Shown here piece by piece: positions 103-32,130 of a stretch of 64,000 bases of DNA. The DNA lies in contig NC_134468.1 in the NCBI RefSeq assembly GCF_964194025.1, positions 44,020,001-44,084,000 of the forward strand, given 5' to 3'. This DNA is from Convolutriloba macropyga. Taxonomy: Eukaryota. The translations under genes and the position numbers were made by a program. Within the stretch, counting starts at the first letter, position 1. Each line of letters opens with the position of its first letter. Below the pieces are notes generated by a model, which worked only from the letters and a program-made list of their open reading frames with translations, was not told where the DNA came from and searched no databases.

Positions 103-111
103 CTAAACAAA

Positions 112-3981: not shown

Positions 3982-4038
3982 GGGTTATTAAAAATGGAGA
4001 ACAAACTCTTTCAAGGTGGACTATGGCGATAGAAGAAG

Positions 4039-5055: not shown

Positions 5056-5630
5056 TTTTTATTAATTACATGGAAATAAAAAATGCTGCACAAAGTTCCA
5101 ACCTTGCGATTGGACCGGCAAGTCAGATATCGGTTGTTCAAAATTGTGGGGACCAGAAAAAGCTGGCCTCTAAGAGATAACAGAAAAGAACGCAGAGACT
5201 TTTTTTAACTTAGGATTTCAGGTCTCTCGTCTTAAGTTATGTATCGTTGAGGTTGCCGTAGCAGCCGCCGAAACCTCCCTTGCTAAGCCCCTTAGTCTTA
5301 CTACGTGGGACCTACAAACACTGGGAATGTAGAAGCTGCGGAAGCAAGGAGCGTCTATTTTCCGATAAATCGGATAACGCTTGAGAAGCCTCTGAAATCA
5401 GTACCTATTTGTCAAAGCGTTCTAAAGTTAAAGGCAATTATGGCTCATCTAAGAAAAAGAACAACCGTTATCTGTCAAGCAGATAACAAAAACGACCGAA
5501 TATTTGAGTTATTTTTCTCTTTTTTTTTTTGTTTTTTTTTTTTTGAAAAGAAGGTAAAGAAAAAGCAGATGTTCCTGAAAATTGCAGGATAGCTTATTTT
5601 GGAAAAAAAAAATCCCGAACCTGTCAACAA

Positions 5631-6121
5631 TATAACAACCCGGTAGGTATTAAAAAAACGAACGTTTGAATTGCGAATGCGGGATTCGAGATTGGGTTGT
5701 TTTAGTTTTTTTTGTTGAAATTAACAACTTCAATTTAATTGATCTTACCTTGTTTTCTGTGCTCTATCTTTTTCTTTGGAAAATCGACAAAGTAAGTTTT
5801 CAGAATATTGAATTAAACTGAATAGGTTATTTATAAAAGCTTGTTGAGAAAAAGCTCAACTAACTGGATTGTAAGCAGAAAAGTCTCAAGTGTCGTTTGG
5901 GCGAAGGAACCTGGCCAACGGAACAAATTCTCAATTAGCTCTTGAAACACGCAAAAGCTAAATAAATTGCGTGCCAAATTGTGTTATCAATAATAAATAC
6001 ACTATGGTCCAGTGGCACGAAAGTAAAACAAAGCTTGAGCGGAAAGGCGCTATAAGATTAATAGATTAATAGCTGGAACATTATACTGCCTAAGGAATAA
6101 TAATGGGGTAGGGCTGTTACA
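5631..6121 (-). repeat. 5' LTR, copy 1 (491 bp, TGTAACA...TGTTATA)
   Basis: Direct repeat of 13976-14467; 7-bp imperfect terminal inverted repeat; followed by ATAT. Confidence 0.95.
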
Positions 6122-9100: not shown

Positions 9101-11246
9101 AGTATGTTAAAATTGTTAGCGAACTTTTTCATGCTCTGAAATTTCAGGATTGACTAAACTTCCGGTTCGGATTGTAAAACCTGCTGTTTTTTTAAATTTT
9201 TTTTCAATTTTTATGCTCTTTTCGATCACTTTAAAACAATTACCGGAACAGCATTACAAAGGAATGACGTTAAATTACCTTAAAAAATTGACGTGCAAAT
9301 GAGTTGCCAGGAGCGCTTATCTTGTTCAGGAAAAAGTTCAAAGTTTTTGTGGCTTCGGCACTTTGCTCGAGTAAAACTTCTTTCTCGAAATTTGTGTTTT
9401 CTCAGTTGTCTTTGTTTAGTGGTCTAAAAATTTCGTCTCGCCAATTAAATGTCCAATTAGCGTCTTTTGGAGTGAAGGAGCTAATTTATTTAGTTTTTTG
9501 ATGACAACTTGTTCAAGCTTGTTGATTTGATTGTTTTCAAAAATATTTGTTTGCAAAGCAAAAAAGTAGTACATTTTTGATATTTTGACGTATTTTCAAT
9601 TAATTTCTGTCAACTTATAGCTCAATTCGGGTAGAGAGCTTACATCATTCACTAACGAAATAAAAGTTAGTTTTAACTGCATGTTACGTTTTCAATTATG
9701 ATTTTTAGGCTTTGAGACTAAAAGGTTCCACATTTACGTATATCAAATTTCTGAAGTTTGTACACTTGTTTTTAGTGTCATGTCACACCATAACTATAAT
9801 TGCAGAACACATAAAAAACGGTGGTTTCTAAACGGCGATTGAAATTATCAAGCGTTTCTAGTCAATAGGTTTTGGTTTTAACGGCTTCGACGCCTATTTG
9901 TTGCAAAGCTCAATTTAATTTTTGATTTATTGCTATATCTGTCATTTTTTGTAGTCATAAGAAATATTTACGATAATGAACATTTTTGGAAGGTGCCATT
10001 TAACCACTTTAAATTTTTAATTCTATAGCTAAAGGTTTTCTTGACATTGAACTTTTTTCTATCAGAAAAAATCATTGTAATTTTGAACTTTTTCGGCTTT
10101 TTTTCCTTTTTTCCTTATTTCAGGTAGATTTTTGCTTAGATTCATCATTGTCAGCTTTCTTGCTGCCAAATTTGGTTTTTAATTATCCTTTTTCCTAGAA
10201 GAAATTGGTTTTCTGGCTTCTATTTTACAAACTTTCTTGAAACTTTTTGTGACTTGGGGGTTTGTCAAATTGAAAACCAATTTAAAAGACCCGCTGGCGT
10301 CGAATGCAGGCCTATTCATTTATATGTCATTTTATACTAGGTAAAAGTTGAGGATATTAGTGGCTTGGGCACTAATTTTTATCAAACTTTTTTTGAAGTT
10401 TCCATTGTTTTCACAATTTGTTGTCTTTTAATAGTTGTTAGACATATTCTGTATAATAAGAGGTCTCGATGGCTTCTCTAGGAATATAAAAGAAACATTT
10501 AATCATTTCAGTTGATTGCTAAAAGTTTTTATGGCTCTTAACTTTTCAGTTTTTCAAAAAAATTGAAACTCTTTTTTCTGATTTTTCCATTTGCGTTCTT
10601 GTTTTGTGAATTGTAAGTTTTCAGGTCGTGTTTAGTGTTTTTTTGAGATCCCATTTTTACCTTGCTAATTTTTTTTAAAAATTAACATCTAGTTTTGGTC
10701 GTAGTAAATGTTTGGTTTTGTTATTTGTTTTTTTTCTTGTCTCATAGTCTTGTTAATGGCATGTCCCATTGGCCCTCTCAACGGCCTTGTTTAATTAGTT
10801 TAGCGGTTTGAGTGAAAGGCATTTTTTCACTCATTAATTATTTTTCTGAGATAGCTGTAATTTTTTTTAAAAAAATCTTCAAGTCTCCTCCTCTTTTGGA
10901 AGACAGTTAAATCAAAAATGTGGATCAGCGGGTCGGTACCTAATGTGCAAACACACATTACCGAGACTCATTGTATTATGTCTTACCATATCCCTGGTGA
11001 GTCAAATTTATTAATCGCAATGTCATATACAGACCAACCAAAATGTTGTTTCTGAACTTTTTATGTCCCTTAAATATTCTCATGTGATTTAAGAAGCGAT
11101 TATTTTTAATTCATAAAGCATTACAAGCGTATCTATAGTAGATCTGGTTTGATTAGTACTACCCGTGGCCGTAGGAATCTCCAAAAGGGTAATGTTTCTT
11201 CTTGCACAGTGGGGTATGTCACGTTCGGGTATTATTAACATTTTTT

Positions 11247-11460
11247 TACCTGGGTCTAGAGTGTTTACTTTGTAATTTAATTTGTAAGCTCTTGCAAGAG
11301 ATAGTTAATTTTTCAAGAATCCTGCAAGAAAAAAATATTTTGAAAGAGCCTTGTAAGAAAAAGCTAATCTTGTCAGATATTGTGAAAATGTTGTAAGATT
11401 TAAAAATGACGAATAAGAATCTTCGAAGAATCTGACAAATTTTTGTTTTCGATTCGGGAG
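11247..11460. repeat. Decayed MITE-like element with (c)ttgcaaga/ttgtaaga internal repeats; also ~28874-29087 and ~62292-62450
   Basis: Begins tacctgggtc, ends ...gattcgggag; repeated tgcaaga/tgtaaga motifs. Boundaries approximate. Confidence 0.4.
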
Positions 11461-13570
11461 CACGCTATAAAAGTGAATCTAAACTGGCCTCTAATAAACT
11501 TTTTTTCTACTGTGAATGCTCTATTTGCAAATTCATGTTTTTAATACGTACCACTGACGCAAACAGGGAAACAATGAGCTGACTTTCAGCGATGATAAGT
11601 TTCATTACTAACAATTTTGAAAGAATTAAACTGCATATGTGAACACTGCTTCTGAAAAATAGGCATGTTACCTTTTTACATTTTGGTTTACAACTGTTAA
11701 CTGAATGTTGAAACGTTTTTCTCATTTTAAAACTGTTGATGTTCCTCATAACAATCTGGTTGTTCTACAAATCGAAAAAATCATTAAAAACTACTGCATG
11801 GATAGTTTTCCCACTATGTAGCCGATCAATTACGTAGCGTCTGGCCTGGTCAACATAGATCGCTACTTCATGGAACGAAATCGTCAACTCCAATAAGAGT
11901 AAAAGCACAAAGACAGATAAGAGCACAAAAACTGATAAAATAAAAAAAATAAATCAAAAACGCAGTTATGGCAATCCCAAGCTGAGGTCTGGAACCCTAT
12001 TTGAGTGTACATTTTTAGTAAAAAGACCTAAAAAGTCGAAAGGAAAAGGAATGTCTGCGCTTTGATTACATGTTCAAGGACACATACAAAATGGACCATA
12101 TATGGTACTTTAGCAGGACTATAAATGTTACCATAAAGGTTCCGTTTTACAGTAGAAAGAAAAAAATATTGAAAACCTTTTTATCATGAAACGGACCATT
12201 TCCGGTGCCGTGCTATTCATATCAAGATTATATATTAAATAAAATCAAGGCATTTATGGTCCATACATGGTCCCTTTGTGGTAATTAGGTTACTATTTAT
12301 GATAAGTAATCCAAACTGAGGTTCGCGACCCAAGGACCAAGAGAGAGAGATATACGACGAATTTGATTGCAGACAGGGGGTTCGGGTGTCATCGACCTAA
12401 TTTTCAGGACAAATTTTTGGTCGCAGCGTTTCATGTTGTCCATACCTGAATACCACATTTAGGTTTGAATTCGGTCTCTCCCGTAAACAATTTTGGGTCT
12501 CAACCGCAATCAATTTGATCTGTTCAGTATGGCCCAGGTCCACTATTGGTCGGGCTGGCTCACATCTGTTTTGTGTCTGTTCGGTTTGGTCCATAGCCAT
12601 TGTAAGATCTGCCTAAGAAGTGTAATAAATTTATTAGAAATGTATTAAAAGAGTTGGTTCTAATCAGAGTTCAAGTAAGTCCTGATCAAAACCAAGAACG
12701 CCAGTCTAAGACAAGAGCTTTCTGCAATTAATGGCCATTTTTGCAAGCAACAACTGATCTTTATCAACTAACCATCATAGTGATGGTTAAGAAGACACAC
12801 TGATTCAACCTCCAAAAACTGCATTTTTCTTACAATTGGCGGTTTTGATTTAAAGAACAGTAAGAAAGTCAACCTTACTTTTCGCTCAAAAATGAAACGT
12901 GAAATGAAATATTAAAATTTGTATGGTTCTCCATGGCTAAATCAGTCTGGTTTAGAGTGAACAATTTATGTTCGTTATGGCTAATGGCCTGGTTGGTGTG
13001 GCCCAGGGTGACCAAAATTCTCTGTTGGGTGAGGTCCAGGGCAGTCAGAGTCCGTTCAATCTGGCCCATACCTGCCTTCTTGTCTTTTCAATCTGGAACC
13101 TCCGTCCATGCCCAGAATCCGTTTGGCACCTACCTGTTTTGGGTCAAAGAACTGCTCCTGGGAAGTTGGATCAACACGGGCGTGGTTCAATTTCGTTTGT
13201 TTACTCCGTAACAATGCCTGTTTGAGGTGGTAAAACTTATGACAGGAAGAATTTTTTTAAGTTTTCAAGGCAAATTATTTGTATCATTGTCATTGACTTG
13301 GAACCAAAGAATTTTTTTAATTGGATATGCAGAAGAACTGTTCCAAATAAGTCGATTTCCTCTCAAGAAGAGCATCTCCCTCAAAAGAAGAATGACACTG
13401 TCAGCATTTTCGCAGTCCGACATTGTTCAAAGAGTGAGAGTTTTTTTAGACTTGAATGAGTGATGATAGTAGAAATTTTTGGTTGGAACAAACTCTTTAA
13501 TTATCTTTGCATCTTTGTTTTCATAATAATAGTAACTTCAAAAGCATTCCCAAACCTTTATTTCAGTATT

Positions 13571-13813
13571 TTATTCGATATCAGGTTGGGTGTAAATGTA
13601 TCCATCTGTAGGCTTGATTGCGGGGGGTAGACAAGCGGACCCGTCTCCATTTTGTGACTTCCAGCACACTGGCGTACTCGCACCACACTTACACTCGAAC
13701 TTGAAATTGTCCTTGGTCGCATCCAGACAATAAGCTCCCATGGAACAAACATCTGTGCTCTTGTACTCTGTCACCGAGTCAATTACTGGTGGTACCTCTT
13801 CATTTCCCTGGGT
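13571..13813 (-). CDS. Terminal exon of small six-Cys peptide (C-x5-C-x11-CxC-x6-C-x10-C, CART-like spacing)
   Basis: Acceptor gaatgtttag| then an open frame TQGNEEVPPVIDSVTEYKSTDVCSMGAYC...YIYTQPDIE*; AATAAA at and just after the stop; paralogs at 52305, 55199 and 57823. Confidence 0.75.
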   Translation of the reverse strand, partial: TQGNEEVPPVIDSVTEYKSTDVCSMGAYCLDATKDNFKFECKCGASTPVCWKSQNGDGSACLPPAIKPTDGYIYTQPDIE

Positions 13814-13975
13814 CTAAACATTCAAAAACATCCCAATGCTCGTTCCCAACTCTGCGCGATGTTTACTTTTTCATTAGCTCTTTTTCAAAAAGCGTCTGAA
13901 AACAAAAACCTGTTGCAGTAAAACGCAACTGTAAAGAAGAGGCAACTAAAACTAAAATAGGTTTAATTTTAATAT

Positions 13976-14467
13976 TATAACAACCCGGTAGGTATTAAAA
14001 AAAACGAACGTTTGAATTGCGAATGCGGGATTCGAGATTGGGTTGTTTTAGTTTTTTTTGTTGAAATTAACAACTTCAATTTAATTGATCTTACCTTGTT
14101 TTCTGTGCTCTATCTTTTTCTTTGGAAAATCGACAAAGTAAGTTTTCAGAATATTGAATTAAACTGAATAGGTTATTTATAAAAGCTTGTTGAGAAAAAG
14201 CTCAACTAACTGGATTGTAAGCAGAAAAGTCTCAAGTGTCGTTTGGGCGAAGGAACATGGCCAACGGAACAAATTCTCAATTAGCTCTTGAAACACGCAA
14301 AAGCTAAATAAATTGCGTGCCAAATTGTGTTATCAATAATAAATACACTATGGTCCAGTGGCACGAAAGTAAAACAAAGCTTGAGCGGAAAGGCGCTATA
14401 AGATTAATAGATTAATAGCTGGAACATTATACTGCCTAAGGAATAATAATGGGGTAGGGCTGTTACA
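13976..14467 (-). repeat. 3' LTR, copy 2 (492 bp)
   Basis: Differs from the 5' LTR by one substitution (plus strand aacatgg vs aacctgg) and one A-run length, by eye. Confidence 0.95.
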
Positions 14468-14478
14468 TCACCCCGCTT
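14468..14478 (-). promoter_or_regulatory. Putative polypurine tract (AAGCGGGGTGA); also 32095-32105
   Basis: Purine-rich run abutting the TG of the 3' LTR; short and interrupted. Confidence 0.55.
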
Positions 14479-14503
14479 AGGAAGGACATGTCCTCATGTC
14501 CCA

Positions 14504-15496
14504 CTATTCTGTCTCCGAACCCGATGAGGACGATGAGCTCGAAGAACGCGAGCGAGGCTTCCTTTTTATTTTCTTGTTTTGTGGATTATGATTTCCCCGA
14601 AGTAATTGAGAACGCAGGGAGCGGAATTCGTTTTGGAGACCTCTGAGGTGACGACAGGTCGTTGAACAGGACTCAGAGGCAGACATAGTGTCCGTATTCA
14701 CCCCTGCATTGCGGACCTTAGAGGATTTTGGCTTTTTAGGTTGTTTTTTCTCCAGCGTAACAACCTTCGCGGAGAGCAGACGATTTGCCGTCCGAGAATC
14801 ATCTAGCATTTGATTCAGCTCGGAAATGCGAGCTTTTAGTTTGTCGATCTCATTGGTAGCCTGGTAAAGGTCACGCTCGTGAGCCTCACGAGATCGACGA
14901 AGTCGAATAAGTTGATCTCGAAGGTCGCGATTTTCAGCCGAGTTGTCAACAGGGATAGCGACTAGATCCGCAGGATCCAGCAGAGGCCTTCGCCTTGCAT
15001 TGTAAGGATCCTGAAGGCGAACTTTCCCATTGCGGTAAAATTCAACAACCCGCAACACGGCATGCAAATTTGCTGAATACACCAAACCGTTGAGGCGTAA
15101 GGGACCGTTGCGAGGTGGACCCATAGCCTGGCGTGAATTGCTTCCTTCGAGCGGGCTGCTTCTCGAACCCGAAGCTGCTGTTGCAGAAGCAGTCTGAACG
15201 ACTGGAATGTTTTTGGAAGGCGGACAAAAGATGATTGTCATTTCATCCGAAGAAGCAGATGAGCAGACATCCGTGTGCGGCTGAGGATCCCGATTTTGCG
15301 AGAGGTTTTGACGGAACTCAAGCAACTGATCACTTGCCCAGTTGCCAGTTATTCCTGTATCTGCTTGAGAGTCCATACTATCGTCCAGCAACGGAATTGC
15401 AGGCGAAGAAGCACCTGAAAGAAGATCTGTGTCCAGAAGAATATCAGGGCCTGGAGAAGCAGGCATAGTGTTGATTGACTCTGAGCTTGTCGACAT
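14504..15496 (-). CDS. ORF4: 330-aa accessory protein of unknown function, copy 2
   Basis: Intact ORF between env and the 3' LTR. Ser/Pro/acidic N-terminus, heptad coiled coil (LRDQLIRLRRSREAH...LEKK), basic clusters, Arg/Ser tail; ATG preceded by ttgttttag. Confidence 0.85.
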   Translation of the reverse strand: MSTSSESINTMPASPGPDILLDTDLLSGASSPAIPLLDDSMDSQADTGITGNWASDQLLEFRQNLSQNRDPQPHTDVCSSASSDEMTIIFCPPSKNIPVVQTASATAASGSRSSPLEGSNSRQAMGPPRNGPLRLNGLVYSANLHAVLRVVEFYRNGKVRLQDPYNARRRPLLDPADLVAIPVDNSAENRDLRDQLIRLRRSREAHERDLYQATNEIDKLKARISELNQMLDDSRTANRLLSAKVVTLEKKQPKKPKSSKVRNAGVNTDTMSASESCSTTCRHLRGLQNEFRSLRSQLLRGNHNPQNKKIKRKPRSRSSSSSSSSGSETE

Positions 15497-15670
15497 CTAA
15501 AACAAGCAATGTCAATCATTTGTGTACAGAAGTGCATCAGGGCTGCTAGTGATTGATGAACGAAAAGAAAAAAATTTTGAATGAAGCAAAAGACAAAAAT
15601 CAGAAAGCGGCAGTTTTTTTTTTTTTTTTCTAAGACAGAACACTATAGGCGATAAAGAGTCAACCTGTGC

Positions 15671-17725
15671 TTAAATTTTTGTTGTGTAGCGGGCAGAATT
15701 TAATTGTGCTGACGGATAAATTGAATCAACTATTACAGTGCGATTATCAGGGTTCCCATCAGTTTCATTGACAAGTTGGTCATGATTGACAGGCGCAGAT
15801 GCGTGTATATTATTTATGTGATTTTGAAGCATCTGCGTAAAAGGCGCAATGGGGTTAAGAAGCCGGAAAACTGTCCAGAAAGGAACTCCATGAGAAAGGA
15901 GCCTAAGCGCAAATACAAGTTTCAATATATAGATAAAGAGCCCTAGAAGCGCTAAAGTTGTTAGCGTAATTACAGTGCACCTCTCGGCGTAGTACCAACC
16001 ACCACTCGCAACAGATTGCAAATCAATCAAATATTTCCAAGCCGCCAAATTTTCTAGTTCTTCGGAAACGCTTGGATTAAAATGCATTAAACCAGGATGA
16101 GAATATTGGCTGCGAGGATCAAGATATACTTCTCGTCCCGAAATTGTTCGGCGCGAGTATTTTAGAACCCGAGCCTTTGCGCTCTGCCTCAAGTTCTGAT
16201 AAGAAAAGAGACCAGCGGTGTGTAATGAAGGTAAGTTATCACTAAAATCTAGATGGCTGAAAACACTTAGAGATTCGGGCGTACGTGCGACCGAATAATC
16301 ATCTCCATAGTGCATCCAGATGCCTTCAGACGTGCGGTACATGTAAGGTGCTATGGGATCACAAGCAGTCAAAGTATAGTTTGGATACACAACTTGTGTT
16401 ATCGGATTCATGAAACGAATTTGCGTATCATTGCCCAAAAGAACAGGAACTTCCTCTGTGCAGTAGGGGAAGTCTGCAATTCGAGCTTCGACTTTAACAC
16501 ATTTGTGGACGTAAAGAACAGCTCCCGCTTTTTCAGCATGTGTGCCTAACATGGAACCGGATCCGAGGAAGAGATTAGGATTGTCCAAGTTTGACGCTAA
16601 AGAAATGAGTCCTTTTAAGATCATCTGACGCGTATTGCAAATTTCATTTTTGATGAAATTTACAATTCGTTGACGCGAAAGATGCGCGTTGACATGCACA
16701 AACTCAATTTTTGTCCCATAGACTAAGTTTGGAATTGCATCTGTGTTGTAATCTATTTCCGGAAGTTGCTCCGTTATAGGTTCAATGACAAAGTAAACAC
16801 CAGAGTAGGTTGTTGGTCGGACCTTATATGAGCAAACACTAACAGTTGTGTTCAGAAGTTCTATATAAAAGACGCGGGAATCATCCCTGGAAGCAGTTTT
16901 TCCACTCAAATACATTGAATCAGCAGAAGAGATCTGAACGCCAGGATGCTCCGGAGAGAACTCAAATATTGATTTAATCTCACACTGACCGTAGAAATGC
17001 GGTAAATAGGTGATTGAGTCATGCTGAAAGTCAGAACCTGGAAAACTGCAGGACGTGGATCTTTCATTGGGATCTGTCAAGATTAAGGAACATGGAGAGC
17101 TGGTTTTGTCCAAAGTTGCGACTACTTTGCCGATGGTTAGTTTTGCGTTTATAACACCAGATGCGTGAATTTTCGATCCACCTGGGGTAATCCAATCCAC
17201 AGGCCAGGTGAAGTAAATTCCAGCTTTCTTGCCACCACGCATGAAAGAGTACGAATAGTCAAATACCTTGAAATTGCCAGGTTTGTATGGTCTACCATCA
17301 AACAAAAGATCCCCCTCAGTCATTTTAAAATTTTCATCTGCAAAACCTGGAAGTTTGAAATTGCGACCACTCCAAATTGCTCTGCAAACCCAAGTTTCTA
17401 ATGCATAGAAAGTAGGCACTAGGCGAGAATACTCTTTTAAATACACAGAATCATCAAATCGGGCAGAATGCGCTAATCCGGTAACAGCGTAAGAAGCTTG
17501 AAACATGCAAAAACTCATTTGAATATCAACTTCGGGCGCATGAAGAACCAAACCACCAAAAGTAATGTTTTTGGTGCTTAATTTATCAGGCGTACACTGT
17601 TCACTCGGAAGAAGCGAGTAAATTTTTGTTGTGAGAACTTCCTCGATGTCATAGCCTACAAGTGTAGAGAAACTGCAATCTACTAGGCAAGTGAACAACA
17701 GCAACACTTGCTGCACAAAGAGCAT
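15671..17725 (-). CDS. env: env-like type I membrane glycoprotein (chuvirus/gB-type-like), copy 2
   Basis: Hydrophobic signal peptide, Cys-rich ectodomain with N-glycosylation sequons (NIT, NTT, NDT, NYT), C-terminal TM (VITLTTLALLGLFIYILKLVFAL); block GAVLYVHKCVKV..C.EEVPV..FMNPIT..T..CDP..P..Y...G.W recalled as chuvirus-G-like. Confidence 0.88.
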   Translation of the reverse strand: MLFVQQVLLLFTCLVDCSFSTLVGYDIEEVLTTKIYSLLPSEQCTPDKLSTKNITFGGLVLHAPEVDIQMSFCMFQASYAVTGLAHSARFDDSVYLKEYSRLVPTFYALETWVCRAIWSGRNFKLPGFADENFKMTEGDLLFDGRPYKPGNFKVFDYSYSFMRGGKKAGIYFTWPVDWITPGGSKIHASGVINAKLTIGKVVATLDKTSSPCSLILTDPNERSTSCSFPGSDFQHDSITYLPHFYGQCEIKSIFEFSPEHPGVQISSADSMYLSGKTASRDDSRVFYIELLNTTVSVCSYKVRPTTYSGVYFVIEPITEQLPEIDYNTDAIPNLVYGTKIEFVHVNAHLSRQRIVNFIKNEICNTRQMILKGLISLASNLDNPNLFLGSGSMLGTHAEKAGAVLYVHKCVKVEARIADFPYCTEEVPVLLGNDTQIRFMNPITQVVYPNYTLTACDPIAPYMYRTSEGIWMHYGDDYSVARTPESLSVFSHLDFSDNLPSLHTAGLFSYQNLRQSAKARVLKYSRRTISGREVYLDPRSQYSHPGLMHFNPSVSEELENLAAWKYLIDLQSVASGGWYYAERCTVITLTTLALLGLFIYILKLVFALRLLSHGVPFWTVFRLLNPIAPFTQMLQNHINNIHASAPVNHDQLVNETDGNPDNRTVIVDSIYPSAQLNSARYTTKI

Positions 17726-17734
17726 CTAAACAAA

Positions 17735-20700
17735 TCACTCAACATCACTGTCTGAATCAAAATAAGCTAAACGGAAAAATCCTGGATGCCGTGCATGATC
17801 AGCAACAGCTCTACGCGGTCGTTGAGGAACTGTTGTGGAACCTGAACCACTTTGATTTTCTGACAAAAAAACTGGCGGTGACGGAATGGCGGAACTTGTA
17901 GGGTTAGTAGTGTTTTGTAACCTATCAGAGGTAGAAGCCTGTCTTTCAGATAAATCAACCAACACAAGATCATCGTCTTCAGGGACGATGGGTTGAGGAC
18001 TTGGTCTTACAGTTTGGTTGGAACGATTTCTGCGCAACCGCTGGTCTGATGGTGTAAAAGGTTTAATGCGATCGTAATGAGCAATCTGTTGTTTTTGAGT
18101 TTTGACGTCTTGTAGAACAAAATTAATTTGGTTAATAACCTTTTTCACGCAATGAGGTCCAGACCAGAAGCTCTTTAATTTAGGAGTTTGACCCTGTGAG
18201 CACACTGGTGAATGAAGAAGCACCAGGTCTCCTTCTTTATACGAAGGACCATGCTTCTTTTTGTCAAAGATAGCTTTTTGTCGGCGCATTTCCCATCCGT
18301 TTTTCTGAATTACGGACTCGAAAATGGTGGAAGATTCAACTAAACGTTGAAAAACATAATCCCGATGACCAACAATTGGAGTGGGCAATGTTGGATATAG
18401 CATATCAACAGGCATGCGCATTTCTTTCCCAAAAACTAATCGGAAAGGCGATTGACCTGTCGACTCATGAACTGCAGAACGATAGGCCATCATGAAAGAT
18501 TGAAGATGAACAGACCAAACTTCATGCCGTTCTGCGCAGTACTTTGCCAACCCATCTTCCAAAGTGCGATTTATGCGTTCCACTTTTGCATTTCCTTGCG
18601 GGTGGTAAGGAGTAGATCTTGAGCTGGTTAACTGCAGCTTATTGCACATATCTGCGAAAAGGCGCGATGTGAACTGCGAACCGTTGTCACTGTGAATATA
18701 TTCAGGTACACCAAATCGGGTGACCCATTGATCTAAGAAAGTGCTACAGATTGTCTCAGCCTTAATGTTCTGTAGGGGTGCAGCCTCGAACCAGCGAGTA
18801 AAATGGTCTCCAATCATTAGGATGTATTTATAAAATTTCTCATTCAACCGACTTTCTGGGAGAGGGCCAAGGATATCAACTGACACGCAAAGAAAAGGTT
18901 CATAGAATGCCCAGAGCTGCATTTCTTGCTGATGTGATTGTTTTGGATTCTTTCGTTTTTGACAAGTTGCACAACCTGAGATCCAGGAGTCCACATCATT
19001 TTTCAATCCTGGCCAGTAAAATCGCTGACGTACCCGATCAAGAGTTTTCTTATTGCCTAAATGTCCTGAAGCAGGTGAATCATGCAACTGAAGAAGAACT
19101 TTTTGAACCTGGTTAAGTGGAACGCAACACTGATGGAAAAGTGTAGATCCATCCAGTTGTTGAAATAGCCGGTACAAAACACCATCAATAATTTTCAATG
19201 TCTCGAATTGCTGCCAGTAACACTGCAAAGCAGATGGTCTACCAAACATTAAGGATCGAGGTGGTTTCTCACCTGTTCGACACCATGATTTGACTACAGA
19301 CAGAGTTTTATCCTGATCTTGCGTTTCTGAAAAGTGCGGAGACGAAGAAACAGATGTGACAGAAGTAGCAGATAAATTCAAAGGTGGTAATCTGGAAAGA
19401 GCATCAGCATTTGCAATAGTTTTTCCAGGCCGATGGACAATTTCAAAATTGAACATACTTAATTTTTCTAGCCAACGCGCTACTATTGCATCAGGCTCTT
19501 TGAACGAATAGAGCCAAACGAGGGCGCGATGGTCAGTAATTATCTGAAATTTTTGCCCAAGAAGAAATTCTTTGAAGTATGATGTGAAGAACACCACAGC
19601 AAAGAGTTCACGTTTCGTAGCCGAGTAGTTTCTTTGACCTTTTTGCAGCACTTTGCTAGCATATGCAATAACCTTTTCACCATTTTTCTGTTTTTGAGAT
19701 AGCACTGCGCCAATTCCAGTAAGCGATGCGTCAGTACAAAGAACGAATTGATCCTTTTCATTTGGAAAACCTAAGATTGGAGCGGATACTAGCGCTGTTT
19801 TCAATTTCTCGAAAGCTTTTTGGCAGTCTGCTGTCCAATGGAACGTTGTTGTTTTATTCATCAATTGGTACAGAGGGTTCGCAATCAAACCAAAATTGAG
19901 AACAAACTTTCTATAGAAGCCAACAAGGCCCATGAACGATCTTAACTGACGAATAGTTTGTGGAACTGGGTATTTCTCCACAGCTGCTATTTTAGCAGGA
20001 TCAGTGTGTATCCCGTCAGCAGAGACTACATGACCCAGAAATACTAACTTCGTTTGGAATAAGGAACATTTGGCAGGTGAAATTTTCAAATTTGCTTCCC
20101 GTATGCGTTGGAACACAAGTTGAAGACGATGTATGTGTTCCTCGAAAGAACGACCAAAGACTATAATATCATCAAGATAAACCAGGACAATTTCATATGT
20201 CAACCCTGATAAAACAATTTCCATTAGTCTTTGAAATGCTCCAGGGGCATTGCAAAGACCCATTGGCATCCGTTTCCACTGATACAGTCCAAACGGCGCA
20301 ATGAAAGAAGTAAGGTGTCGATCTTCTTCATCAATCTCCATTTGATGAAATCCACTGCAAAGGTCGAGGCTAGAGAAGAAAATGCTTCCCTCGAGATTAT
20401 TTAGAATATCTGATATGCGCGGAAGAGGCCACGATGTTTTGACTGTTTGGGCATTTAGTTTCCGATAGTCAATAACAAGACGATATGACCCGTCACGTTT
20501 CGGAACTAACACGGTTGGAGCTGCCCACTCGGAATGAGTAGGAGATATGAGATCTTTTTCTTGGAGTTTGGTTATCTTATCCTTGAGATCTTTTCTTTTA
20601 GAAGGATTCATTGATCTGTATGGCACTCGGCTAGGCTGGGCGTCATCTTTCAACTGAATACGCAGTTTATGCAAATTACATGAGCCTAGATCCCATTTGT

Positions 20701-21604
20701 CGGTAGCAAACACGTCTGCAAACTGCTTGAGTAGACTAAAAGCGTCCTTTTGTTGTTTTTTAGTGAGAGTGCTGAACTTTGATTTAAACAACTGCATCAA
20801 AGTTTCAGCTGAATTGATGTCAACAGCATTGAAACCAACAGTTTGAAGGACAGTCTCGTTGTAGGGTAAGATTTGCGCAATAGTTTGCGAAGGATATAAA
20901 GTTACGGAATTACAAGTAGGGTTAAGTACTCTTAGCCAAAATTCATTTTGAGAAACTGTTACAAGAGACGAGGCCACTAAAAGGGAGTTTAAACTGGTGA
21001 AACCTACGTGGGGCTCAACCAAACCCACAGTCGCGTCAGACGAAGTACGCGAACTGCTTGAAGAAAACTTATGCGCATGATGTGACTTTAGATTACATTT
21101 TACGAGTGCTTCACTTCGAGGTGGAATAAGGAAACGCGAAGTTACAGAACAAAGCGAAGTCTCAGTTGTCGGAGAATTATCCTCAAACCACTGAGACAAC
21201 GGACTGATACATTCCAGTACTGCGTCACCTACATCTAATAAACCCCGAGAGAAGTCTACTGCACATTTTTGTTTGTGTAGGAGATCAAAACCGACCACAC
21301 AAGGAACACTGAGGTGGGCACAAATGTAAAATTTGAAAGAAAACATGGGACCATTTTTAAACCAACGACATGGAAGCAAGCACATACCCTTAAATTGAAG
21401 CATAGAGCCATTTATGGCGGATGCTTGGATATCAGATGCTTCCAATGTAAGCGAAGGGCTAAAGTTGCTGAACTTGCCAAAAACATCGGCACGAATTACA
21501 CTAATTGAAGCACCTGAATCAATCAGGGCAGGCAGTATATTATCGGCGATTATTATTTTGGAAAGAAGCGACTGTATGCCAAAAATACGCTTGTTTTGTG
21601 CCAT
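17735..21604 (-). CDS. pol: Pol polyprotein, copy 2
   Basis: As copy 1, with two aa differences (SLMFGRP, GQTPKLK). Confidence 0.98.
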   Translation of the reverse strand: MAQNKRIFGIQSLLSKIIIADNILPALIDSGASISVIRADVFGKFSNFSPSLTLEASDIQASAINGSMLQFKGMCLLPCRWFKNGPMFSFKFYICAHLSVPCVVGFDLLHKQKCAVDFSRGLLDVGDAVLECISPLSQWFEDNSPTTETSLCSVTSRFLIPPRSEALVKCNLKSHHAHKFSSSSSRTSSDATVGLVEPHVGFTSLNSLLVASSLVTVSQNEFWLRVLNPTCNSVTLYPSQTIAQILPYNETVLQTVGFNAVDINSAETLMQLFKSKFSTLTKKQQKDAFSLLKQFADVFATDKWDLGSCNLHKLRIQLKDDAQPSRVPYRSMNPSKRKDLKDKITKLQEKDLISPTHSEWAAPTVLVPKRDGSYRLVIDYRKLNAQTVKTSWPLPRISDILNNLEGSIFFSSLDLCSGFHQMEIDEEDRHLTSFIAPFGLYQWKRMPMGLCNAPGAFQRLMEIVLSGLTYEIVLVYLDDIIVFGRSFEEHIHRLQLVFQRIREANLKISPAKCSLFQTKLVFLGHVVSADGIHTDPAKIAAVEKYPVPQTIRQLRSFMGLVGFYRKFVLNFGLIANPLYQLMNKTTTFHWTADCQKAFEKLKTALVSAPILGFPNEKDQFVLCTDASLTGIGAVLSQKQKNGEKVIAYASKVLQKGQRNYSATKRELFAVVFFTSYFKEFLLGQKFQIITDHRALVWLYSFKEPDAIVARWLEKLSMFNFEIVHRPGKTIANADALSRLPPLNLSATSVTSVSSSPHFSETQDQDKTLSVVKSWCRTGEKPPRSLMFGRPSALQCYWQQFETLKIIDGVLYRLFQQLDGSTLFHQCCVPLNQVQKVLLQLHDSPASGHLGNKKTLDRVRQRFYWPGLKNDVDSWISGCATCQKRKNPKQSHQQEMQLWAFYEPFLCVSVDILGPLPESRLNEKFYKYILMIGDHFTRWFEAAPLQNIKAETICSTFLDQWVTRFGVPEYIHSDNGSQFTSRLFADMCNKLQLTSSRSTPYHPQGNAKVERINRTLEDGLAKYCAERHEVWSVHLQSFMMAYRSAVHESTGQSPFRLVFGKEMRMPVDMLYPTLPTPIVGHRDYVFQRLVESSTIFESVIQKNGWEMRRQKAIFDKKKHGPSYKEGDLVLLHSPVCSQGQTPKLKSFWSGPHCVKKVINQINFVLQDVKTQKQQIAHYDRIKPFTPSDQRLRRNRSNQTVRPSPQPIVPEDDDLVLVDLSERQASTSDRLQNTTNPTSSAIPSPPVFLSENQSGSGSTTVPQRPRRAVADHARHPGFFRLAYFDSDSDVE

Positions 21605-21661
21605 GGGTTATTAAAAATGGAGAACAAACTCTTTCAAGGTGGACTATGGCGATAGAAGAAG

Positions 21662-22678
21662 CTATCGGTTAGAGTATGGTTTTGACTCTGGGCAATTACG
21701 TCGCTGATGTTGAGAAGAACCACAGTTCCAACAATTTTTGCAATTATTTTTAGTATGACCTTTACGATTACAACCATAACAAATAGTTGGTCCGGTGAAC
21801 CTAACTTTTCTTTCATTACTGATTGAACGACTGTGTGAATTGTCAAGAAACGTTTTTCGCGGAGAGGAAGATTGACGACGTTCTCCGTGTTGCGATGGGC
21901 TACGAGAGAAAGTAGGTGACTTGCGTTTGTTAAACGGAGACAATCTGTAAGGAGAGTTGCTCCTGCGACCCGATTTTTTGTTCATCGGACGAGAACGTGG
22001 TTGGTAACTAACTTGTCCGGCCATGAGTTTATCAACTTTACGCGAAAGTGCTTCAATGGAACTCACAGAAGTAGATGAAGGCGCAGTCTCATTTGCATTT
22101 GCTTCAAGACGGTAAATTGCGTCGAAGTGGAGTGCTGATTCTAAGGCCGCGTTAATGTCAGCCGGCTTGTTCTTTCTTAACTCTACCCTTACATGAATAT
22201 TGTGAAGGCCATCAATGAAAGATTGAAGCACAATATGGTCTCTGATTGCCTGCGTGTCTTGGGGATAAGCCTTATTAGCTAGAAGTTTGAGCTCAGCTAA
22301 AAATTCACTTACTTTTTCGGACTCGCCTTGAATACGTTTTGCAAGGGATGACCGAAAAAATTCAGGAGGTTCCTGATATTGGCGCAAAAATTGCTTTTTA
22401 AGCTCTGAATAATCATTTTTTGTTGCGTCATCTAATGACTGATAAAATTCGATAGCACTGCCTCGTAAGCGCAAGGGAAAAATAGTATGACGCTTATCAA
22501 TGTAAACCTGTTGACCAGCGCTGTCGTGTTGCGGAGTTCCATCACTATTGAATGCTTTTTTAAGCCAATTTTGTAACGAACTCAAGAGTTCGAATTGTGT
22601 TATATAGGCCTGAATATCACTTGTTCCGTTAAAAGGCTCCGGTAGAAGAAGTTTAGCTTCCAGAGCTGCGTCAGCCAT
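21662..22678 (-). CDS. gag: Gag, copy 2
   Basis: Same protein as copy 1. Confidence 0.95.
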   Translation of the reverse strand: MADAALEAKLLLPEPFNGTSDIQAYITQFELLSSLQNWLKKAFNSDGTPQHDSAGQQVYIDKRHTIFPLRLRGSAIEFYQSLDDATKNDYSELKKQFLRQYQEPPEFFRSSLAKRIQGESEKVSEFLAELKLLANKAYPQDTQAIRDHIVLQSFIDGLHNIHVRVELRKNKPADINAALESALHFDAIYRLEANANETAPSSTSVSSIEALSRKVDKLMAGQVSYQPRSRPMNKKSGRRSNSPYRLSPFNKRKSPTFSRSPSQHGERRQSSSPRKTFLDNSHSRSISNERKVRFTGPTICYGCNRKGHTKNNCKNCWNCGSSQHQRRNCPESKPYSNR

Positions 22679-23236
22679 TTTTTATTAATTACATGGAAAT
22701 AAAAAATGCTGCACAAAGTTCCAACCTTGCGATTGGACCGGCAAGTCAGATATCGGTTGTTCAAAATTGTGGGGACCAGAAAAAGCTGGCCTCTAAGAGA
22801 TAACAGAAAAGAACGCAGAGACTTTTTTTAACTTAGGATTTCAGGTCTCTCGTCTTAAGTTATGTATCGTTGAGGTTGCCGTAGCAGCCGCCGAAACCTC
22901 CCTTGCTAAGCCCCTTAGTCTTACTACGTGGGACCTACAAACACTGGGAATGTAGAAGCTGCGGAAGCAAGGAGCGTCTATTTTCCGATAAATCGGATAA
23001 CGCTTGAGAAGCCTCTGAAATCAGTACCTATTTGTCAAAGCGTTCTAAAGTTAAAGGCAATTATGGCTCATCTAAGAAAAAGAACAACCGTTATCTGTCA
23101 AGCAGATAACAAAAACGACCGAATATTTGAGTTATTTTTCTCTTTTTTTTTTTTTGTTTTTTTTTTTTTGAAAAGAAGGTAAAGAAAAAGCAGATGTTCC
23201 TGAAAATTGCAGGATAGCTTATTTTGGAAAAAAAAA

Positions 23237-23254
23237 ATCCCGAACCTGTCAACA
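23237..23254 (-). promoter_or_regulatory. Putative non-canonical primer-binding site TGTTGACAGGTTCGGGAT; also 5612-5629 and 40860-40877
   Basis: Begins 1 nt after the 5' LTR; 18 nt ending in GGGAT(T), the usual complement of a tRNA T-arm; starts TGT rather than TGG. Confidence 0.55.
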
Positions 23255-23255
23255 A

Positions 23256-23746
23256 TATAACAACCCGGTAGGTATTAAAAAAACGAACGTTTGAATTGCG
23301 AATGCGGGATTCGAGATTGGGTTGTTTTAGTTTTTTTTGTTGAAATTAACAACTTCAATTTAATTGATCTTACCTTGTTTTCTGTGCTCTATCTTTTTCT
23401 TTGGAAAATCGACAAAGTAAGTTTTCAGAATATTGAATTAAACTGAATAGGTTATTTATAAAAGCTTGTTGAGAAAAAGCTCAACTAACTGGATTGTAAG
23501 CAGAAAAGTCTCAAGTGTCGTTTGGGCGAAGGAACCTGGCCAACGGAACAAATTCTCAATTAGCTCTTGAAACACGCAAAAGCTAAATAAATTGCGTGCC
23601 AAATTGTGTTATCAATAATAAATACACTATGGTCCAGTGGCACGAAAGTAAAACAAAGCTTGAGCGGAAAGGCGCTATAAGATTAATAGATTAATAGCTG
23701 GAACATTATACTGCCTAAGGAATAATAATGGGGTAGGGCTGTTACA
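23256..23746 (-). repeat. 5' LTR, copy 2
   Basis: Direct repeat; followed by the ATAT target duplication. Confidence 0.95.
23359..23460 (-). promoter_or_regulatory. LTR signals: TATA box TATAAATA (23460-23453), splice donor AAG|GTAAGA (exon end 23374), poly(A) signal ATTAAA (23364-23359)
   Basis: Motifs read on the minus strand in U3-R-U5 order; present in all five LTRs. Confidence 0.6.
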
Positions 23747-31197: not shown

Positions 31198-31440
31198 TTA
31201 TTCGATATCAGGTTGGGTGTAAATGTATCCATCTGTAGGCTTGATTGCGGGGGGTAGACAAGCGGACCCGTCTCCATTTTGTGACTTCCAGCACACTGGC
31301 GTACTCGCACCACACTTACACTCGAACTTGAAATTGTCCTTGGTCGCATCCAGACAATAAGCTCCCATGGAACAAACATCTGTGCTCTTGTACTCTGTCA
31401 CCGAGTCAATTACTGGTGGTACCTCTTCATTTCCCTGGGT
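31198..31440 (-). CDS. Terminal exon of six-Cys CART-like peptide, array copy
   Basis: Same as 13571-13813 at offset 17627. Confidence 0.75.
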   Translation of the reverse strand, partial: TQGNEEVPPVIDSVTEYKSTDVCSMGAYCLDATKDNFKFECKCGASTPVCWKSQNGDGSACLPPAIKPTDGYIYTQPDIE

Positions 31441-31602
31441 CTAAACATTCAAAAACATCCCAATGCTCGTTCCCAACTCTGCGCGATGTTTACTTTTTCA
31501 TTAGCTCTTTTTCAAAAAGCGTCTGAAAACAAAAACCTGTTGCAGTAAAACGCAACTGTAAAGAAGAGGCAACTAAAACTAAAATAGGTTTAATTTTAAT
31601 AT

Positions 31603-32094
31603 TATAACAACCCGGTAGGTATTAAAAAAAACGAACGTTTGAATTGCGAATGCGGGATTCGAGATTGGGTTGTTTTAGTTTTTTTTGTTGAAATTAACAA
31701 CTTCAATTTAATTGATCTTACCTTGTTTTCTGTGCTCTATCTTTTTCTTTGGAAAATCGACAAAGTAAGTTTTCAGAATATTGAATTAAACTGAATAGGT
31801 TATTTATAAAAGCTTGTTGAGAAAAAGCTCAACTAACTGGATTGTAAGCAGAAAAGTCTCAAGTGTCGTTTGGGCGAAGGAACATGGCCAACGGAACAAA
31901 TTCTCAATTAGCTCTTGAAACACGCAAAAGCTAAATAAATTGCGTGCCAAATTGTGTTATCAATAATAAATACACTATGGTCCAGTGGCACGAAAGTAAA
32001 ACAAAGCTTGAGCGGAAAGGCGCTATAAGATTAATAGATTAATAGCTGGAACATTATACTGCCTAAGGAATAATAATGGGGTAGGGCTGTTACA
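31603..32094 (-). repeat. 3' LTR, copy 3
   Basis: Carries the same 3'-LTR-specific variants as copy 2. Confidence 0.95.
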
Positions 32095-32130
32095 TCACCC
32101 CGCTTAGGAAGGACATGTCCTCATGTCCCA

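What the first reader, a model, noticed from the sequence alone, without database searches (positions are those of the whole stretch)
15671..17725. Intact Ty3/Gypsy element carrying a chuvirus/gB-type glycoprotein as env
Seen: an uninterrupted 684-aa ORF with signal peptide, Cys-rich ectodomain and C-terminal TM, 9 nt after pol and inside young LTRs. The motifs LVGYD, YSLL...C, EICNTRQMILKGLISLA, G.VLYVHKCVKV, C.EE.PV, F..P.T, T.CD...P..Y and G.W match, from memory, chuvirus-like glycoproteins. Known: insect errantiviruses use baculovirus F-type env; chuvirus-G capture is described for mosquito BEL/Pao elements and a gB-like env for nematode Tas. Inference: this is a potentially infectious invertebrate endogenous retrovirus with a Gypsy pol and a class III-type fusogen. 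I cannot confirm whether this particular lineage is already described.
Basis: partly seen in the sequence, partly recalled or inferred. Interest (0 to 1): 0.9.

Follow-up and report, generated by a model that had tools for sequence, protein, structure and literature searches.

The report
Acoel gypsy retroelement with chuvirus-like envelope
The ORF is the intact envelope gene of a young, multi-copy Ty3/gypsy retrovirus-like element, most likely in the acoel worm Convolutriloba macropyga; its fusion protein is of the chuvirus / herpesvirus-gB (class III) type, a kind of element already published for many animal phyla but not, as far as I could find, for acoels.

Summary
Window 15671-17725 (minus strand) is an uninterrupted 684-aa ORF, 9 nt after pol, with an N-terminal hydrophobic leader and one C-terminal membrane anchor. 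It lies inside a complete 9,771-bp LTR element (13976-23746). The element has 492-nt LTRs 99.6% alike, a 4-bp target duplication, a PBS-like site, a polypurine tract, gag, pol, env and a conserved fourth ORF.

The interpretation also holds. Pol is closest to yeast Ty3 (E 6e-110). Env passes Pfam PF24664 (Monjiviricetes fusion glycoprotein). It hits a named chuvirus glycoprotein by sequence. Its AlphaFold model matches chu-like glycoproteins (E 1e-29) and herpesvirus gB (E 1e-12), and no F-type fusogen among the 50 listed hits of either library.

Near-identical copies lie on a chromosome of the acoel Convolutriloba macropyga. Of 13 copies read, 7 have all four genes uninterrupted. Ten of 11 insertion sites have perfect 4-bp duplications.

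The kind is not new. Chary and Hayashi (eLife 2026, preprint 2023) described about 1,500 env-carrying Ty3/gypsy elements, including chuvirus-like/gB-type ones. Xenacoelomorpha was not among the phyla they surveyed. The fourth ORF, the separate pol ORF and a PBS dimorphism are not mentioned there.

Verdict: real, well supported, a new member of a known kind. Infectivity is untested.

The parts
13976..23746 (-). Complete LTR retroelement (9,771 bp): LTR-PBS-gag-pol-env-ORF4-PPT-LTR
   Evidence: LTR alignment, self-BLAST, ORF list, TSD
23256..23746 (-). 5' LTR (491 nt; ends TGTAAC...GTTATA)
   Evidence: same ends in 13 copies
23237..23254 (-). PBS-like 18-mer, starting 1 nt after the 5' LTR; this is the commoner of two versions in the family and lacks the usual TGG start
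   Evidence: primer tRNA not identified
21662..22678 (-). gag, 338 aa (Retrotrans_gag capsid domain, C-terminal CCHC zinc knuckles)
   Evidence: Pfam; 67% identical to gag of L001
17735..21604 (-). pol, 1289 aa: protease (DSGA motif near the N-terminus), RT, RNase H, integrase; has its own ATG 57 nt after the gag stop, with four in-frame stops between
   Evidence: Pfam, Ty3 Gag-Pol 7q5b E 5.7e-110, junction sequence, alignment
15671..17725 (-). env, 684 aa: signal-like leader, class III (chuvirus-like / gB-like) ectodomain with a long central helix (residues 332-379), TM at about 582-614, cytoplasmic tail
14504..15496 (-). ORF4, 330 aa: accessory gene of unknown function; disordered N-terminal half, short beta region, confident long helix 187-251 (coiled-coil-like), basic then poly-Ser/acidic tail; no signal peptide or TM
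14468..14478 (-). Polypurine tract directly upstream of the 3' LTR
   Evidence: the 20 nt before the 3' LTR are identical in 13 of 13 copies
13976..14467 (-). 3' LTR (492 nt)
23747..23750 (.). Target-site duplication ATAT (upstream copy)
13972..13975 (.). Target-site duplication ATAT (downstream copy)
31603..41369 (-). Second complete copy of the same insertion (99.9% identical, same flanks; all four genes uninterrupted)
1..6121 (-). Third copy of the same insertion, cut by the window start (start of env, pol, gag, 5' LTR)
1..43364 (.). Tandem array of a 17.6-kb unit (element plus 7.85-kb AT-rich spacer), about 2.46 units at 99.9% identity

Best explanation
The ORF is the env gene of an endogenous, recently transposing Ty3/gypsy (Metaviridae, errantivirus-like) LTR retroelement, most likely in the genome of the acoel Convolutriloba macropyga. 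The element is laid out as LTR-PBS-gag-pol-env-ORF4-PPT-LTR. Env is a type I membrane glycoprotein with the class III fusion-protein fold. By sequence it belongs to the family of Jingchuvirales and other Monjiviricetes glycoproteins, and by fold it resembles herpesvirus gB. Shown here: the anatomy, the homologies, the fold, the copy number, the target-site duplications, and long-term purifying selection on env. Inferred from established knowledge of class III fusogens and of Drosophila errantiviruses: Env is made from a subgenomic mRNA and trimerises on membranes that enclose Gag/Pol particles. It then inserts internal fusion loops into a target membrane and refolds around its central helix, letting capsids pass from one cell to another, for example from somatic cells into the germ line, before integrase makes the 4-bp duplicated insertions seen here. 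ORF4 is a family-specific accessory gene whose role is unknown.
For: Anatomy. Ty3/gypsy identity of pol: (7q5b E 5.7e-110; 4ol8 E 3e-86). Env family: PF24664 at 72.9 bits against a cut-off of 27, and all 38 aligned relatives match it. There are 553 library hits at E<=1e-3, including the NCBI-named Tacheng Tick Virus 4 glycoprotein. A relative (P0069) sits on 4.9-kb contigs whose gene layout (four ORFs, no pol) suggests, by inference, an RNA-virus segment. Fold: AF2 mean pLDDT 78.3 with a 48-residue central helix. BFVD top hits are chu-like glycoproteins at E 1e-29 to 1e-27, and gB follows at 1e-13. All 50 listed PDB hits are gB. Env belongs to the element: it lies inside the LTRs in all 13 copies, and relatives at 54-75% env identity keep the gag-pol-env(-ORF4) order. 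Recent mobility: copies are 99.4-99.6% alike and LTR pairs 98.2-100% alike. Ten of 11 insertion sites have different, perfect 4-bp duplications, and 7 of 13 copies have all four genes open. Selection: against L001 and L017, synonymous sites are saturated (pS 0.78-0.81) while env has the lowest non-synonymous difference of the four genes (pN 0.17 and 0.27, against 0.23 and 0.30 for pol). Among copies, pN/pS is 0.14 for gag, 0.24 for pol and 0.52 for env. Host: one copy lies on OZ077310.1 of GCA_964194025.3, the C. macropyga assembly, and animal genes (7tm_1, Neur_chan_memb) flank other copies.
Against: No functional evidence exists for fusion, particle formation or cell-to-cell passage; intact ORFs and selection are only consistent with them. 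The fusion loops and the trimer were not modelled, because the tool returns a monomer summary without coordinates. Foldseek TM-scores are low (0.2-0.5), as expected for a multi-domain protein whose domains are placed differently, so the fold match rests on E-values and alignment length. No sequence-level link to any solved structure was found, even with a profile. The PBS of the window copy lacks the canonical TGG and its tRNA is unidentified. How pol is translated is unclear, since four stops separate it from gag. The window itself is not proven to come from C. macropyga; this is inferred from 99.4-99.6% identical copies. The pN/pS values rest on few variable sites.
Confidence: 0.85

Rival explanations
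1. Env is a passenger: a captured viral gene that the element carries but no longer uses, so the family spreads purely within cells like an ordinary retrotransposon.
For: Env shows the highest pN/pS among copies (0.52). The window copy differs from the other copies at 5-9 env residues, against 0-5 in the twice-longer pol. Drosophila gypsy is known to spread by env-independent as well as env-dependent routes (abstract of PMC1635307).
Against: Env is open in 12 of 13 copies, while pol is broken in 4. Over divergence that saturates synonymous sites, env is the best conserved of the four genes (74-77% against 65-67%). Its central helix is 91% conserved by column across the family. An unused 2-kb gene would not stay open across relatives at 54% identity.
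Confidence: 0.1
2. The ORF is a non-retroviral endogenous viral element: a chuvirus glycoprotein gene integrated on its own that merely lies next to a retrotransposon.
For: Jingchuvirales glycoprotein EVEs are common in arthropod genomes (PMC10084718, PMC7642597, listed).
Against: The gene lies between pol and the 3' LTR, inside the target-site duplication, in 13 of 13 copies at different genomic sites. The same order is kept in relatives of 54-75% identity from other samples. No chuvirus N or L gene is nearby.
Confidence: 0.02
3. The carrier is a BEL/Pao element, like the mosquito elements known to carry chuvirus-like glycoproteins, and not Ty3/gypsy.
For: The first described capture of a chuvirus glycoprotein was by BEL/Pao elements (Dezordi et al. 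2020, PMC7642597). BEL/Pao has the same PR-RT-RH-IN order.
Against: The best solved relative is Ty3 itself, at E 5.7e-110 over RT-RH-IN. Pfam gives RT_RNaseH, RT_RNaseH_2 and Integrase_H2C2 and no Pao peptidase family.
Confidence: 0.02
4. The three copies in the window are an assembly artefact (a collapsed or expanded repeat), not a real tandem array. This concerns the surroundings and not the nature of the ORF.
For: The units are 99.9% identical over 25.7 kb, which is hard even for long-read assemblers.
Against: The units differ at 14 mismatches and 5 gaps, as independent copies would. A different tandem form, two elements sharing an LTR, occurs on an independently assembled contig (L002).
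Confidence: 0.2

Closest known systems
HSV/gB-type ENV Ty3/gypsy 'errantiviruses' of metazoans (Chary & Hayashi, eLife 2026, PMC13524379; preprint 2023)
   Same: Ty3/gypsy gag-pol-env inside LTRs. Env is a class III fusogen that the authors describe as resembling Chuviridae envelope genes and being structurally similar to gB. Both have multiple near-identical intact copies per genome and no conserved furin site.
   Different: The host phylum Xenacoelomorpha is not in their list of surveyed groups. They report GAG-ENV-POL order for flatworms, nematodes and bryozoans, whereas this element is GAG-POL-ENV. A fourth conserved ORF, a pol ORF separated from gag and a PBS dimorphism are not mentioned in their main text. 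Placement in their POL tree was not tested.
Mosquito BEL/Pao elements with Chuviridae-like glycoprotein (Dezordi et al. 2020, PMC7642597)
   Same: An LTR retroelement carrying a Jingchuvirales-type glycoprotein as env.
   Different: The carrier is a different retroelement family (BEL/Pao against Ty3/gypsy), and the host is an insect rather than an acoel.
Drosophila errantiviruses (gypsy, ZAM, Idefix)
   Same: Ty3/gypsy elements with env after pol and 4-bp target duplications. The proposed mode of use is the same: Env-mediated passage between cells (own knowledge; PMC10541861 listed).
   Different: Their env is F-type (baculovirus/paramyxovirus-like, class I-like). Here it is class III, and no F-type protein appears in the 50 listed hits of either fold search.
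Glycoproteins of Jingchuvirales and related Monjiviricetes (for example Tacheng Tick Virus 4 G; Pfam PF24664)
   Same: Sequence family membership, best fold matches, similar length, conserved cysteines.
   Different: Only 14-19% identity over the full alignment and 22-31% over the matched parts. This gene is encoded in DNA inside a retroelement, with no RNA-virus genes beside it.
Herpesvirus glycoprotein B
   Same: Class III fold over nearly the whole ectodomain (600-790 aligned columns, E 1e-12 to 5e-10).
   Different: No detectable sequence similarity, even with a profile, so the likeness is in fold only. gB works with gH/gL, and nothing of that kind is present here.
Spumaretroviruses (foamy viruses), as an analogy of genome organisation only (own knowledge)
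   Same: Pol has its own initiation codon and is not fused to Gag. There are extra genes between env and the 3' LTR.
   Different: Unrelated lineage and env type. The expression mechanism here is unknown.

Membership tests
Ty3/gypsy (Metaviridae) LTR retroelement | Two LTRs flanked by a short target-site duplication | tested here: met
   492-nt LTRs, 99.6% alike; 4-bp TSD ATAT; 10 of 11 other insertion sites also have perfect 4-bp TSDs
Ty3/gypsy (Metaviridae) LTR retroelement | pol domain order PR-RT-RNase H-IN, with RT/RH/IN closest to Ty3/gypsy | tested here: met
   Pfam order RVT_1, RT_RNaseH, Integrase_H2C2, rve; DSGA protease motif; best PDB match Ty3 Gag-Pol at E 5.7e-110. No formal phylogeny was made.
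Ty3/gypsy (Metaviridae) LTR retroelement | gag with capsid domain and CCHC zinc knuckle | tested here: met
   PF03732 E 6.9e-7 (29.8 bits against a cut-off of 24.1); zf-CCHC E 7.4e-4 (19.9 bits, just under the cut-off of 20.8)
Ty3/gypsy (Metaviridae) LTR retroelement | tRNA primer-binding site after the 5' LTR and polypurine tract before the 3' LTR | tested here: inconclusive
   The PPT is present and invariant in 13 copies. An 18-mer in the PBS position exists in two versions; the TGG-initiated version is in 4 of 13 copies and the window copies carry the other. No tRNA gene was available for matching.
Monjiviricetes fusion glycoprotein (Pfam PF24664; Jingchuvirales-type G) | Score above Pfam's gathering threshold | tested here: met
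   72.9 bits against 27, residues 294-528; a named chuvirus G is recovered by phmmer at E 7.4e-13
Class III viral fusion protein (gB / rhabdovirus G / gp64 type) | Multi-domain beta-rich ectodomain with a long central helix, resembling solved class III structures | tested here: met
   AF2 pLDDT 78.3, helix 332-379; all 50 listed PDB hits are gB at E down to 1.2e-12; BFVD hits are chu-like, rhabdo-like and gB proteins
Class III viral fusion protein (gB / rhabdovirus G / gp64 type) | Internal bipartite hydrophobic fusion loops in domain I; homotrimer | not testable with these tools
   Only a monomer was predicted and no coordinates are returned. An aromatic conserved stretch around residues 174-183 is a candidate loop by inference only.
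Class III viral fusion protein (gB / rhabdovirus G / gp64 type) | Type I topology: signal peptide, single C-terminal TM, no N-terminal fusion peptide made by cleavage | tested here: met
   Hydropathy shows only residues 1-25 and about 582-614 as hydrophobic; no R-x-K/R-R site
Env-carrying Ty3/gypsy 'errantivirus', HSV/gB-type (sensu Chary & Hayashi) | gag, pol and env as uninterrupted ORFs in one element, found in more than one highly similar copy | tested here: met
   7 of 13 copies have all genes open, at 99.4-99.9% identity
Env-carrying Ty3/gypsy 'errantivirus', HSV/gB-type (sensu Chary & Hayashi) | Placement in their POL extended RT/connection tree (insect or 'ancient' group) and cysteine-bridge configuration class | not tested
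   Their sequences and supplements are not held here
Exogenous or endogenised chuvirus (Jingchuvirales genome or EVE) | Glycoprotein accompanied by chuvirus N and L (RdRp) genes, or lying alone outside a retroelement | tested here: not met
   The neighbours are gag, pol and ORF4 within LTRs
Baculovirus F / paramyxovirus F-type env (classical insect errantivirus env) | Class I-like F fold with furin site and adjacent fusion peptide | tested here: not met
   No F-type protein among the 50 listed matches of either library; no furin site

The most novel reading that the evidence does not exclude
This may be the first described env-carrying Ty3/gypsy lineage of Xenacoelomorpha, and a 'complex' one. 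It has a conserved fourth gene (ORF4: disordered region, small beta region, coiled coil), which in one relative is replaced by a J-domain protein in the same position. Its pol has its own start codon behind four stops. It also has two alternative primer-binding sites within a family that is 99.5% identical. Together these would suggest accessory-gene regulation, a pol expression strategy that does not use a Gag-Pol fusion, and ongoing primer switching. That would make it a new variant and not just one more member.
Probability: 0.35. Interest if true: 0.6.

Novelty: new member of a known kind. Interest (0 to 1): 0.45.

Why it matters
It adds a phylum that sits at a debated, deep position in animal phylogeny to the hosts of envelope-carrying Ty3/gypsy elements. 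The published survey argues that such elements are ancient in animals but did not sample this phylum. The family is unusually fresh: several LTR pairs are identical and most copies are open. That makes it a good descriptive system for asking how such elements are expressed and kept in check in an animal that reproduces asexually and regenerates from stem cells. The conserved fourth ORF and the stand-alone pol ORF hint at gene-expression strategies otherwise known from complex retroviruses. The main claim, a gypsy element with a chuvirus/gB-type env, is already in the literature, so the finding confirms and extends what is known and does not overturn it.

Tried and rejected
- Sequence search of env against solved structures found only chance antibody hits, and a profile of 38 relatives found nothing. 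The gB likeness is therefore fold-level only.
- Rfam on the whole window found nothing.
- There are no tRNA genes in the window, and only one doubtful tRNA in 230 kb of related loci, so the primer tRNA could not be named.
- ORF4 has no Pfam family above threshold, only weak coiled-coil noise. Its AF2 model has pLDDT 50, with only helix 187-251 confident. I did not send that model to fold search because a low-confidence model gives meaningless matches.
I removed that row and did not send it elsewhere.
- The exact look-up of the window's ORF4 failed because it differs by one residue from the common version.
- Classical dN/dS between family members is undefined because synonymous sites are saturated, so I report pN and pS instead.
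- pN/pS for ORF4 among copies (0.04) is biased, because the loci were picked by identical ORF4 protein. I discarded it.
- Read-through or frameshift expression of pol was rejected for this element: gag and pol share a frame but four stops lie between them.
- The fact that all four ORFs share one frame is not conserved in L001 or L017, so I treat it as chance.
- Supplements of the eLife paper are not held, and the sample accessions of relatives appear in no paper, so the hosts of the relatives remain unknown.
- The JGI metagenome scan gave a single further relative.
- Leader regions of the window element and L001 do not align.
Full report
**Observation**

The ORF is there as described. Window 15671-17725 on the minus strand reads from ATG to stop without interruption and encodes 684 aa. 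It starts 9 nt after the stop of a 1289-aa pol ORF (17735-21604), which follows a 338-aa gag ORF (21662-22678).

Hydropathy shows a hydrophobic N-terminal leader and a single strong membrane segment at about residues 582-614, followed by a tail of about 70 residues. The ectodomain has 11 cysteines and 4 N-glycosylation sequons, and no furin-type site.

- The ORF is on the minus strand.
- A fourth ORF of 330 aa (14504-15496) lies between env and the 3' LTR.
- The element occurs about 2.5 times in the window.

**The element**

Aligning the two ends gives LTRs of 491 and 492 nt (23256-23746 and 13976-14467). They differ by one substitution and one 1-nt indel. They are flanked by the 4-bp duplication ATAT.

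A purine-rich tract lies directly before the 3' LTR. The 20 nt there are identical in all 13 copies read. An 18-mer in the primer-binding position begins one base after the 5' LTR. The element is thus complete at 9,771 bp: LTR-PBS-gag-pol-env-ORF4-PPT-LTR.

**Pol and gag**

Pfam finds RVT_1, RT_RNaseH/RT_RNaseH_2, Integrase_H2C2 and rve in that order in pol. In gag it finds Retrotrans_gag above its cut-off and a CCHC knuckle just below its cut-off. The best solved relative of pol is the Ty3 Gag-Pol polyprotein (7q5b, E 5.7e-110, residues 315-1184), followed by Ty3 RT (4ol8, E 3e-86). No BEL/Pao family is hit. A DSGA protease motif sits near the pol N-terminus.

Gag and pol are separate ORFs. 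They share a frame, but the 57-nt gap holds four in-frame stops counting the gag stop. A Gag-Pol fusion by read-through or frameshift is therefore not possible in this element. How pol is translated is unknown.

**Env**

- *Sequence family.* Pfam PF24664 (Monjiviricetes_fusion, 'viral fusion glycoprotein') matches residues 294-528 at 72.9 bits against a cut-off of 27.
- *Relatives in the 50%-cluster library.* An exhaustive phmmer search finds 553 proteins at E<=1e-3. One of them (P0081, E 7.4e-13) is named by NCBI as the glycoprotein of Tacheng Tick Virus 4, a chuvirus by my own knowledge. Another (P0069) lies on 4.9-kb contigs with four ORFs and no pol, a layout that suggests an RNA-virus segment.
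- *Alignment.* All 38 sequences of my alignment match PF24664. Seven cysteines are invariant and an eighth nearly so, at only 14-19% identity.
- *Predicted structure.* AlphaFold2 on that alignment gives mean pLDDT 78.3. The model has beta-rich N-terminal domains, a 48-residue central helix (332-379), further beta domains, and membrane-proximal and transmembrane helices.
- *Fold search, viral library (BFVD).* Chu-like and related Monjiviricetes glycoproteins come first (E 1.3e-29 to 2e-26, 670-730 aligned columns). Rhabdo-like G proteins follow, then herpesvirus gB at about 1e-13.
- *Fold search, PDB.* All 50 listed matches are herpesvirus gB (E 1.2e-12 to 5e-10). TM-scores are low (0.2-0.5), as expected when domains of a long multi-domain protein are placed differently.
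- *What was not found.* No F-type or class I fusogen is among the 50 listed matches of either library. By sequence, nothing in the PDB matches, even with a profile, so the gB likeness is one of fold only.

It is not met.

**Host and copies**

The common version of ORF4 (P0183) is encoded on 21 contigs. One is OZ077310.1 of GCA_964194025.3, which a genome note identifies as a chromosome of the acoel Convolutriloba macropyga (Xenacoelomorpha). Genes flanking other copies include a GPCR and a neurotransmitter-gated channel fragment, so the host is an animal. The window itself is assigned to this species by inference from 99.4-99.6% identical copies.

I read 13 copies: 11 in loci L002-L011 and two complete ones in the window.
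- All are 99.4-99.9% identical to the window copy, and LTR pairs are 98.2-100% identical.
- Ten of 11 independent insertion sites have perfect 4-bp duplications of different sequence.
- Seven copies have all four genes uninterrupted.
- Pol is broken in four copies: one frameshift each in two copies, and one premature stop each in two.
- Gag is broken in two copies, by one frameshift each.
- Env is broken in one copy, by one premature stop.
- ORF4 is broken in none, but the loci were chosen by identical ORF4 protein.

**Selection**

Relatives from other samples keep the same gene order. One relative, L016, comes from a Tara Oceans marine metagenome, as named in its record.

Amino-acid identity of the window copy to L001 is 67% for gag, 65% for pol, 74-77% for env and 42% for ORF4.

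Against L001 and L017, synonymous sites are saturated (pS about 0.8). Non-synonymous differences are lowest in env, at pN 0.17 and 0.27, compared with 0.23 and 0.30 in pol. Env has therefore been under purifying selection at least as strong as pol.

Among the young copies, pN/pS is 0.14 for gag, 0.24 for pol and 0.52 for env, on few sites.

**ORF4**

It has no Pfam family, no signal peptide and no membrane segment. AlphaFold is confident only for a long helix at 187-251.

It is nevertheless conserved:
- 42% identity to the ORF in the same position in L001 (E 4e-47).
- 28% identity over the short beta region and the helix in L017 (E 3e-7).
- Nine database relatives.

In the contig carrying env relative P0011, the ORF in that position has a DnaJ domain instead. 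I regard ORF4 as a real accessory gene of unknown function.

**Mechanism**

*Shown here:* an intact, selected class III fusogen gene inside a recently integrating Ty3/gypsy element.

*Inferred from established knowledge of class III fusion proteins and of Drosophila errantiviruses:*
- Env is translated from a subgenomic message and forms trimers in membranes.
- Its refolding around the central helix drives fusion, so that capsids can enter neighbouring cells.
- Integration there produces the 4-bp duplications seen.

Whether this element is infectious in any sense was not and cannot be tested here.

**Comparison with what is known**

Chary and Hayashi (PMC13524379; preprint 2023) report about 1,500 env-carrying Ty3/gypsy elements across animal phyla, with either F-type or HSV/gB-type env. 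[quoted passage not shown] The kind is therefore known.

Their list of surveyed groups does not include Xenacoelomorpha. Their main text mentions no acoel, no accessory ORF and no tandem arrays. My literature searches found no report of such elements in acoels. The C. macropyga genome note appeared in August 2026.

My rating is a new member of a known kind, with a modest chance that the extra features make it a new variant.

**Seen in passing**

- Window 1-43364 is a tandem array of a 17.6-kb unit (element plus 7.85-kb AT-rich spacer), at 99.9% identity and with the same flanks in each unit.
- L002 holds two elements sharing a middle LTR within one target duplication.
- The PBS exists in two versions within this near-identical family. 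The TGG-initiated version, in 4 of 13 copies, matches the sequence at the same position in the distant relative L017 over 14 nt.

The N runs at 52781-52980 and 59132-59297 were left untouched.

Noticed in passing
window 1-43364: A 17.6-kb unit (9.77-kb element plus 7.85-kb AT-rich spacer) is repeated head to tail about 2.46 times at 99.9% identity (14 mismatches and 5 gaps over 25.7 kb). Every unit has the same target duplication and flanks, so the duplication came after the insertion, or it is an assembly artefact. The array may continue left of the window.
   Followed up: partly
window 23237-23254 and the same position in L002-L011 and L017: The 18-mer in the PBS position comes in two versions within a family that is 99.5% identical. 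Eight copies (both window copies included) carry a version without the TGG start. Four carry a TGG-initiated version that differs at 4 positions (3 of them adjacent) and matches the distant relative L017. One copy has a further change. This pattern would fit primer switching, but the tRNAs are unidentified.
   Followed up: partly
window 14504-15496: A fourth ORF (330 aa) lies between env and the 3' LTR. It is conserved in relatives (42% identity in L001, 28% in L017). It is largely disordered with one confident long helix and has no known family. In the contig of env relative P0011, the ORF in this position carries a DnaJ domain instead.
   Followed up: partly
window 21605-21664: Gag and pol are separate ORFs in the same frame, with four in-frame stops in the 57-nt gap counting the gag stop, so no Gag-Pol fusion is possible. 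The relative L016 has a single fused 1733-aa gag-pol ORF.
   Followed up: partly
L002:1787-20762: Two elements lie head to tail, sharing the middle LTR and enclosed by one target duplication (AATT). Both carry the same single frameshift in pol.
   Followed up: partly
L011 and L005: L011 is the only one of 11 insertions without a matching 4-bp duplication, possibly through recombination between copies. L005 has a partly duplicated 3' LTR, giving an element of 9,995 bp.
   Followed up: no
window 8115-11404 versus 61300-63768; 46202-49542; 53194-58323: Parts of the spacer recur at 87-92% identity near the right end of the window. There are also two other local duplications, with units of about 1.7 kb at 79-82% and about 2.7 kb at 90-93%. 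No ORF of note and no Rfam or tRNA hit was found in these regions.
   Followed up: no
   Followed up: no
L013 and L014 (about 4.9 kb each): These contigs encode a PF24664 glycoprotein followed by ORFs of 443, 230-247 and 152 aa, with no pol. They look like segments of a chu-like RNA virus and are among the nearest relatives of env outside the retroelement family.
   Followed up: no
L016 (Tara Oceans marine metagenome contig) and L018 (JAAUXW010078031.1): Relatives of the env at 52-54% identity occur in marine metagenome data. Their hosts are unknown, so the family is not confined to one acoel genome.
   Followed up: no
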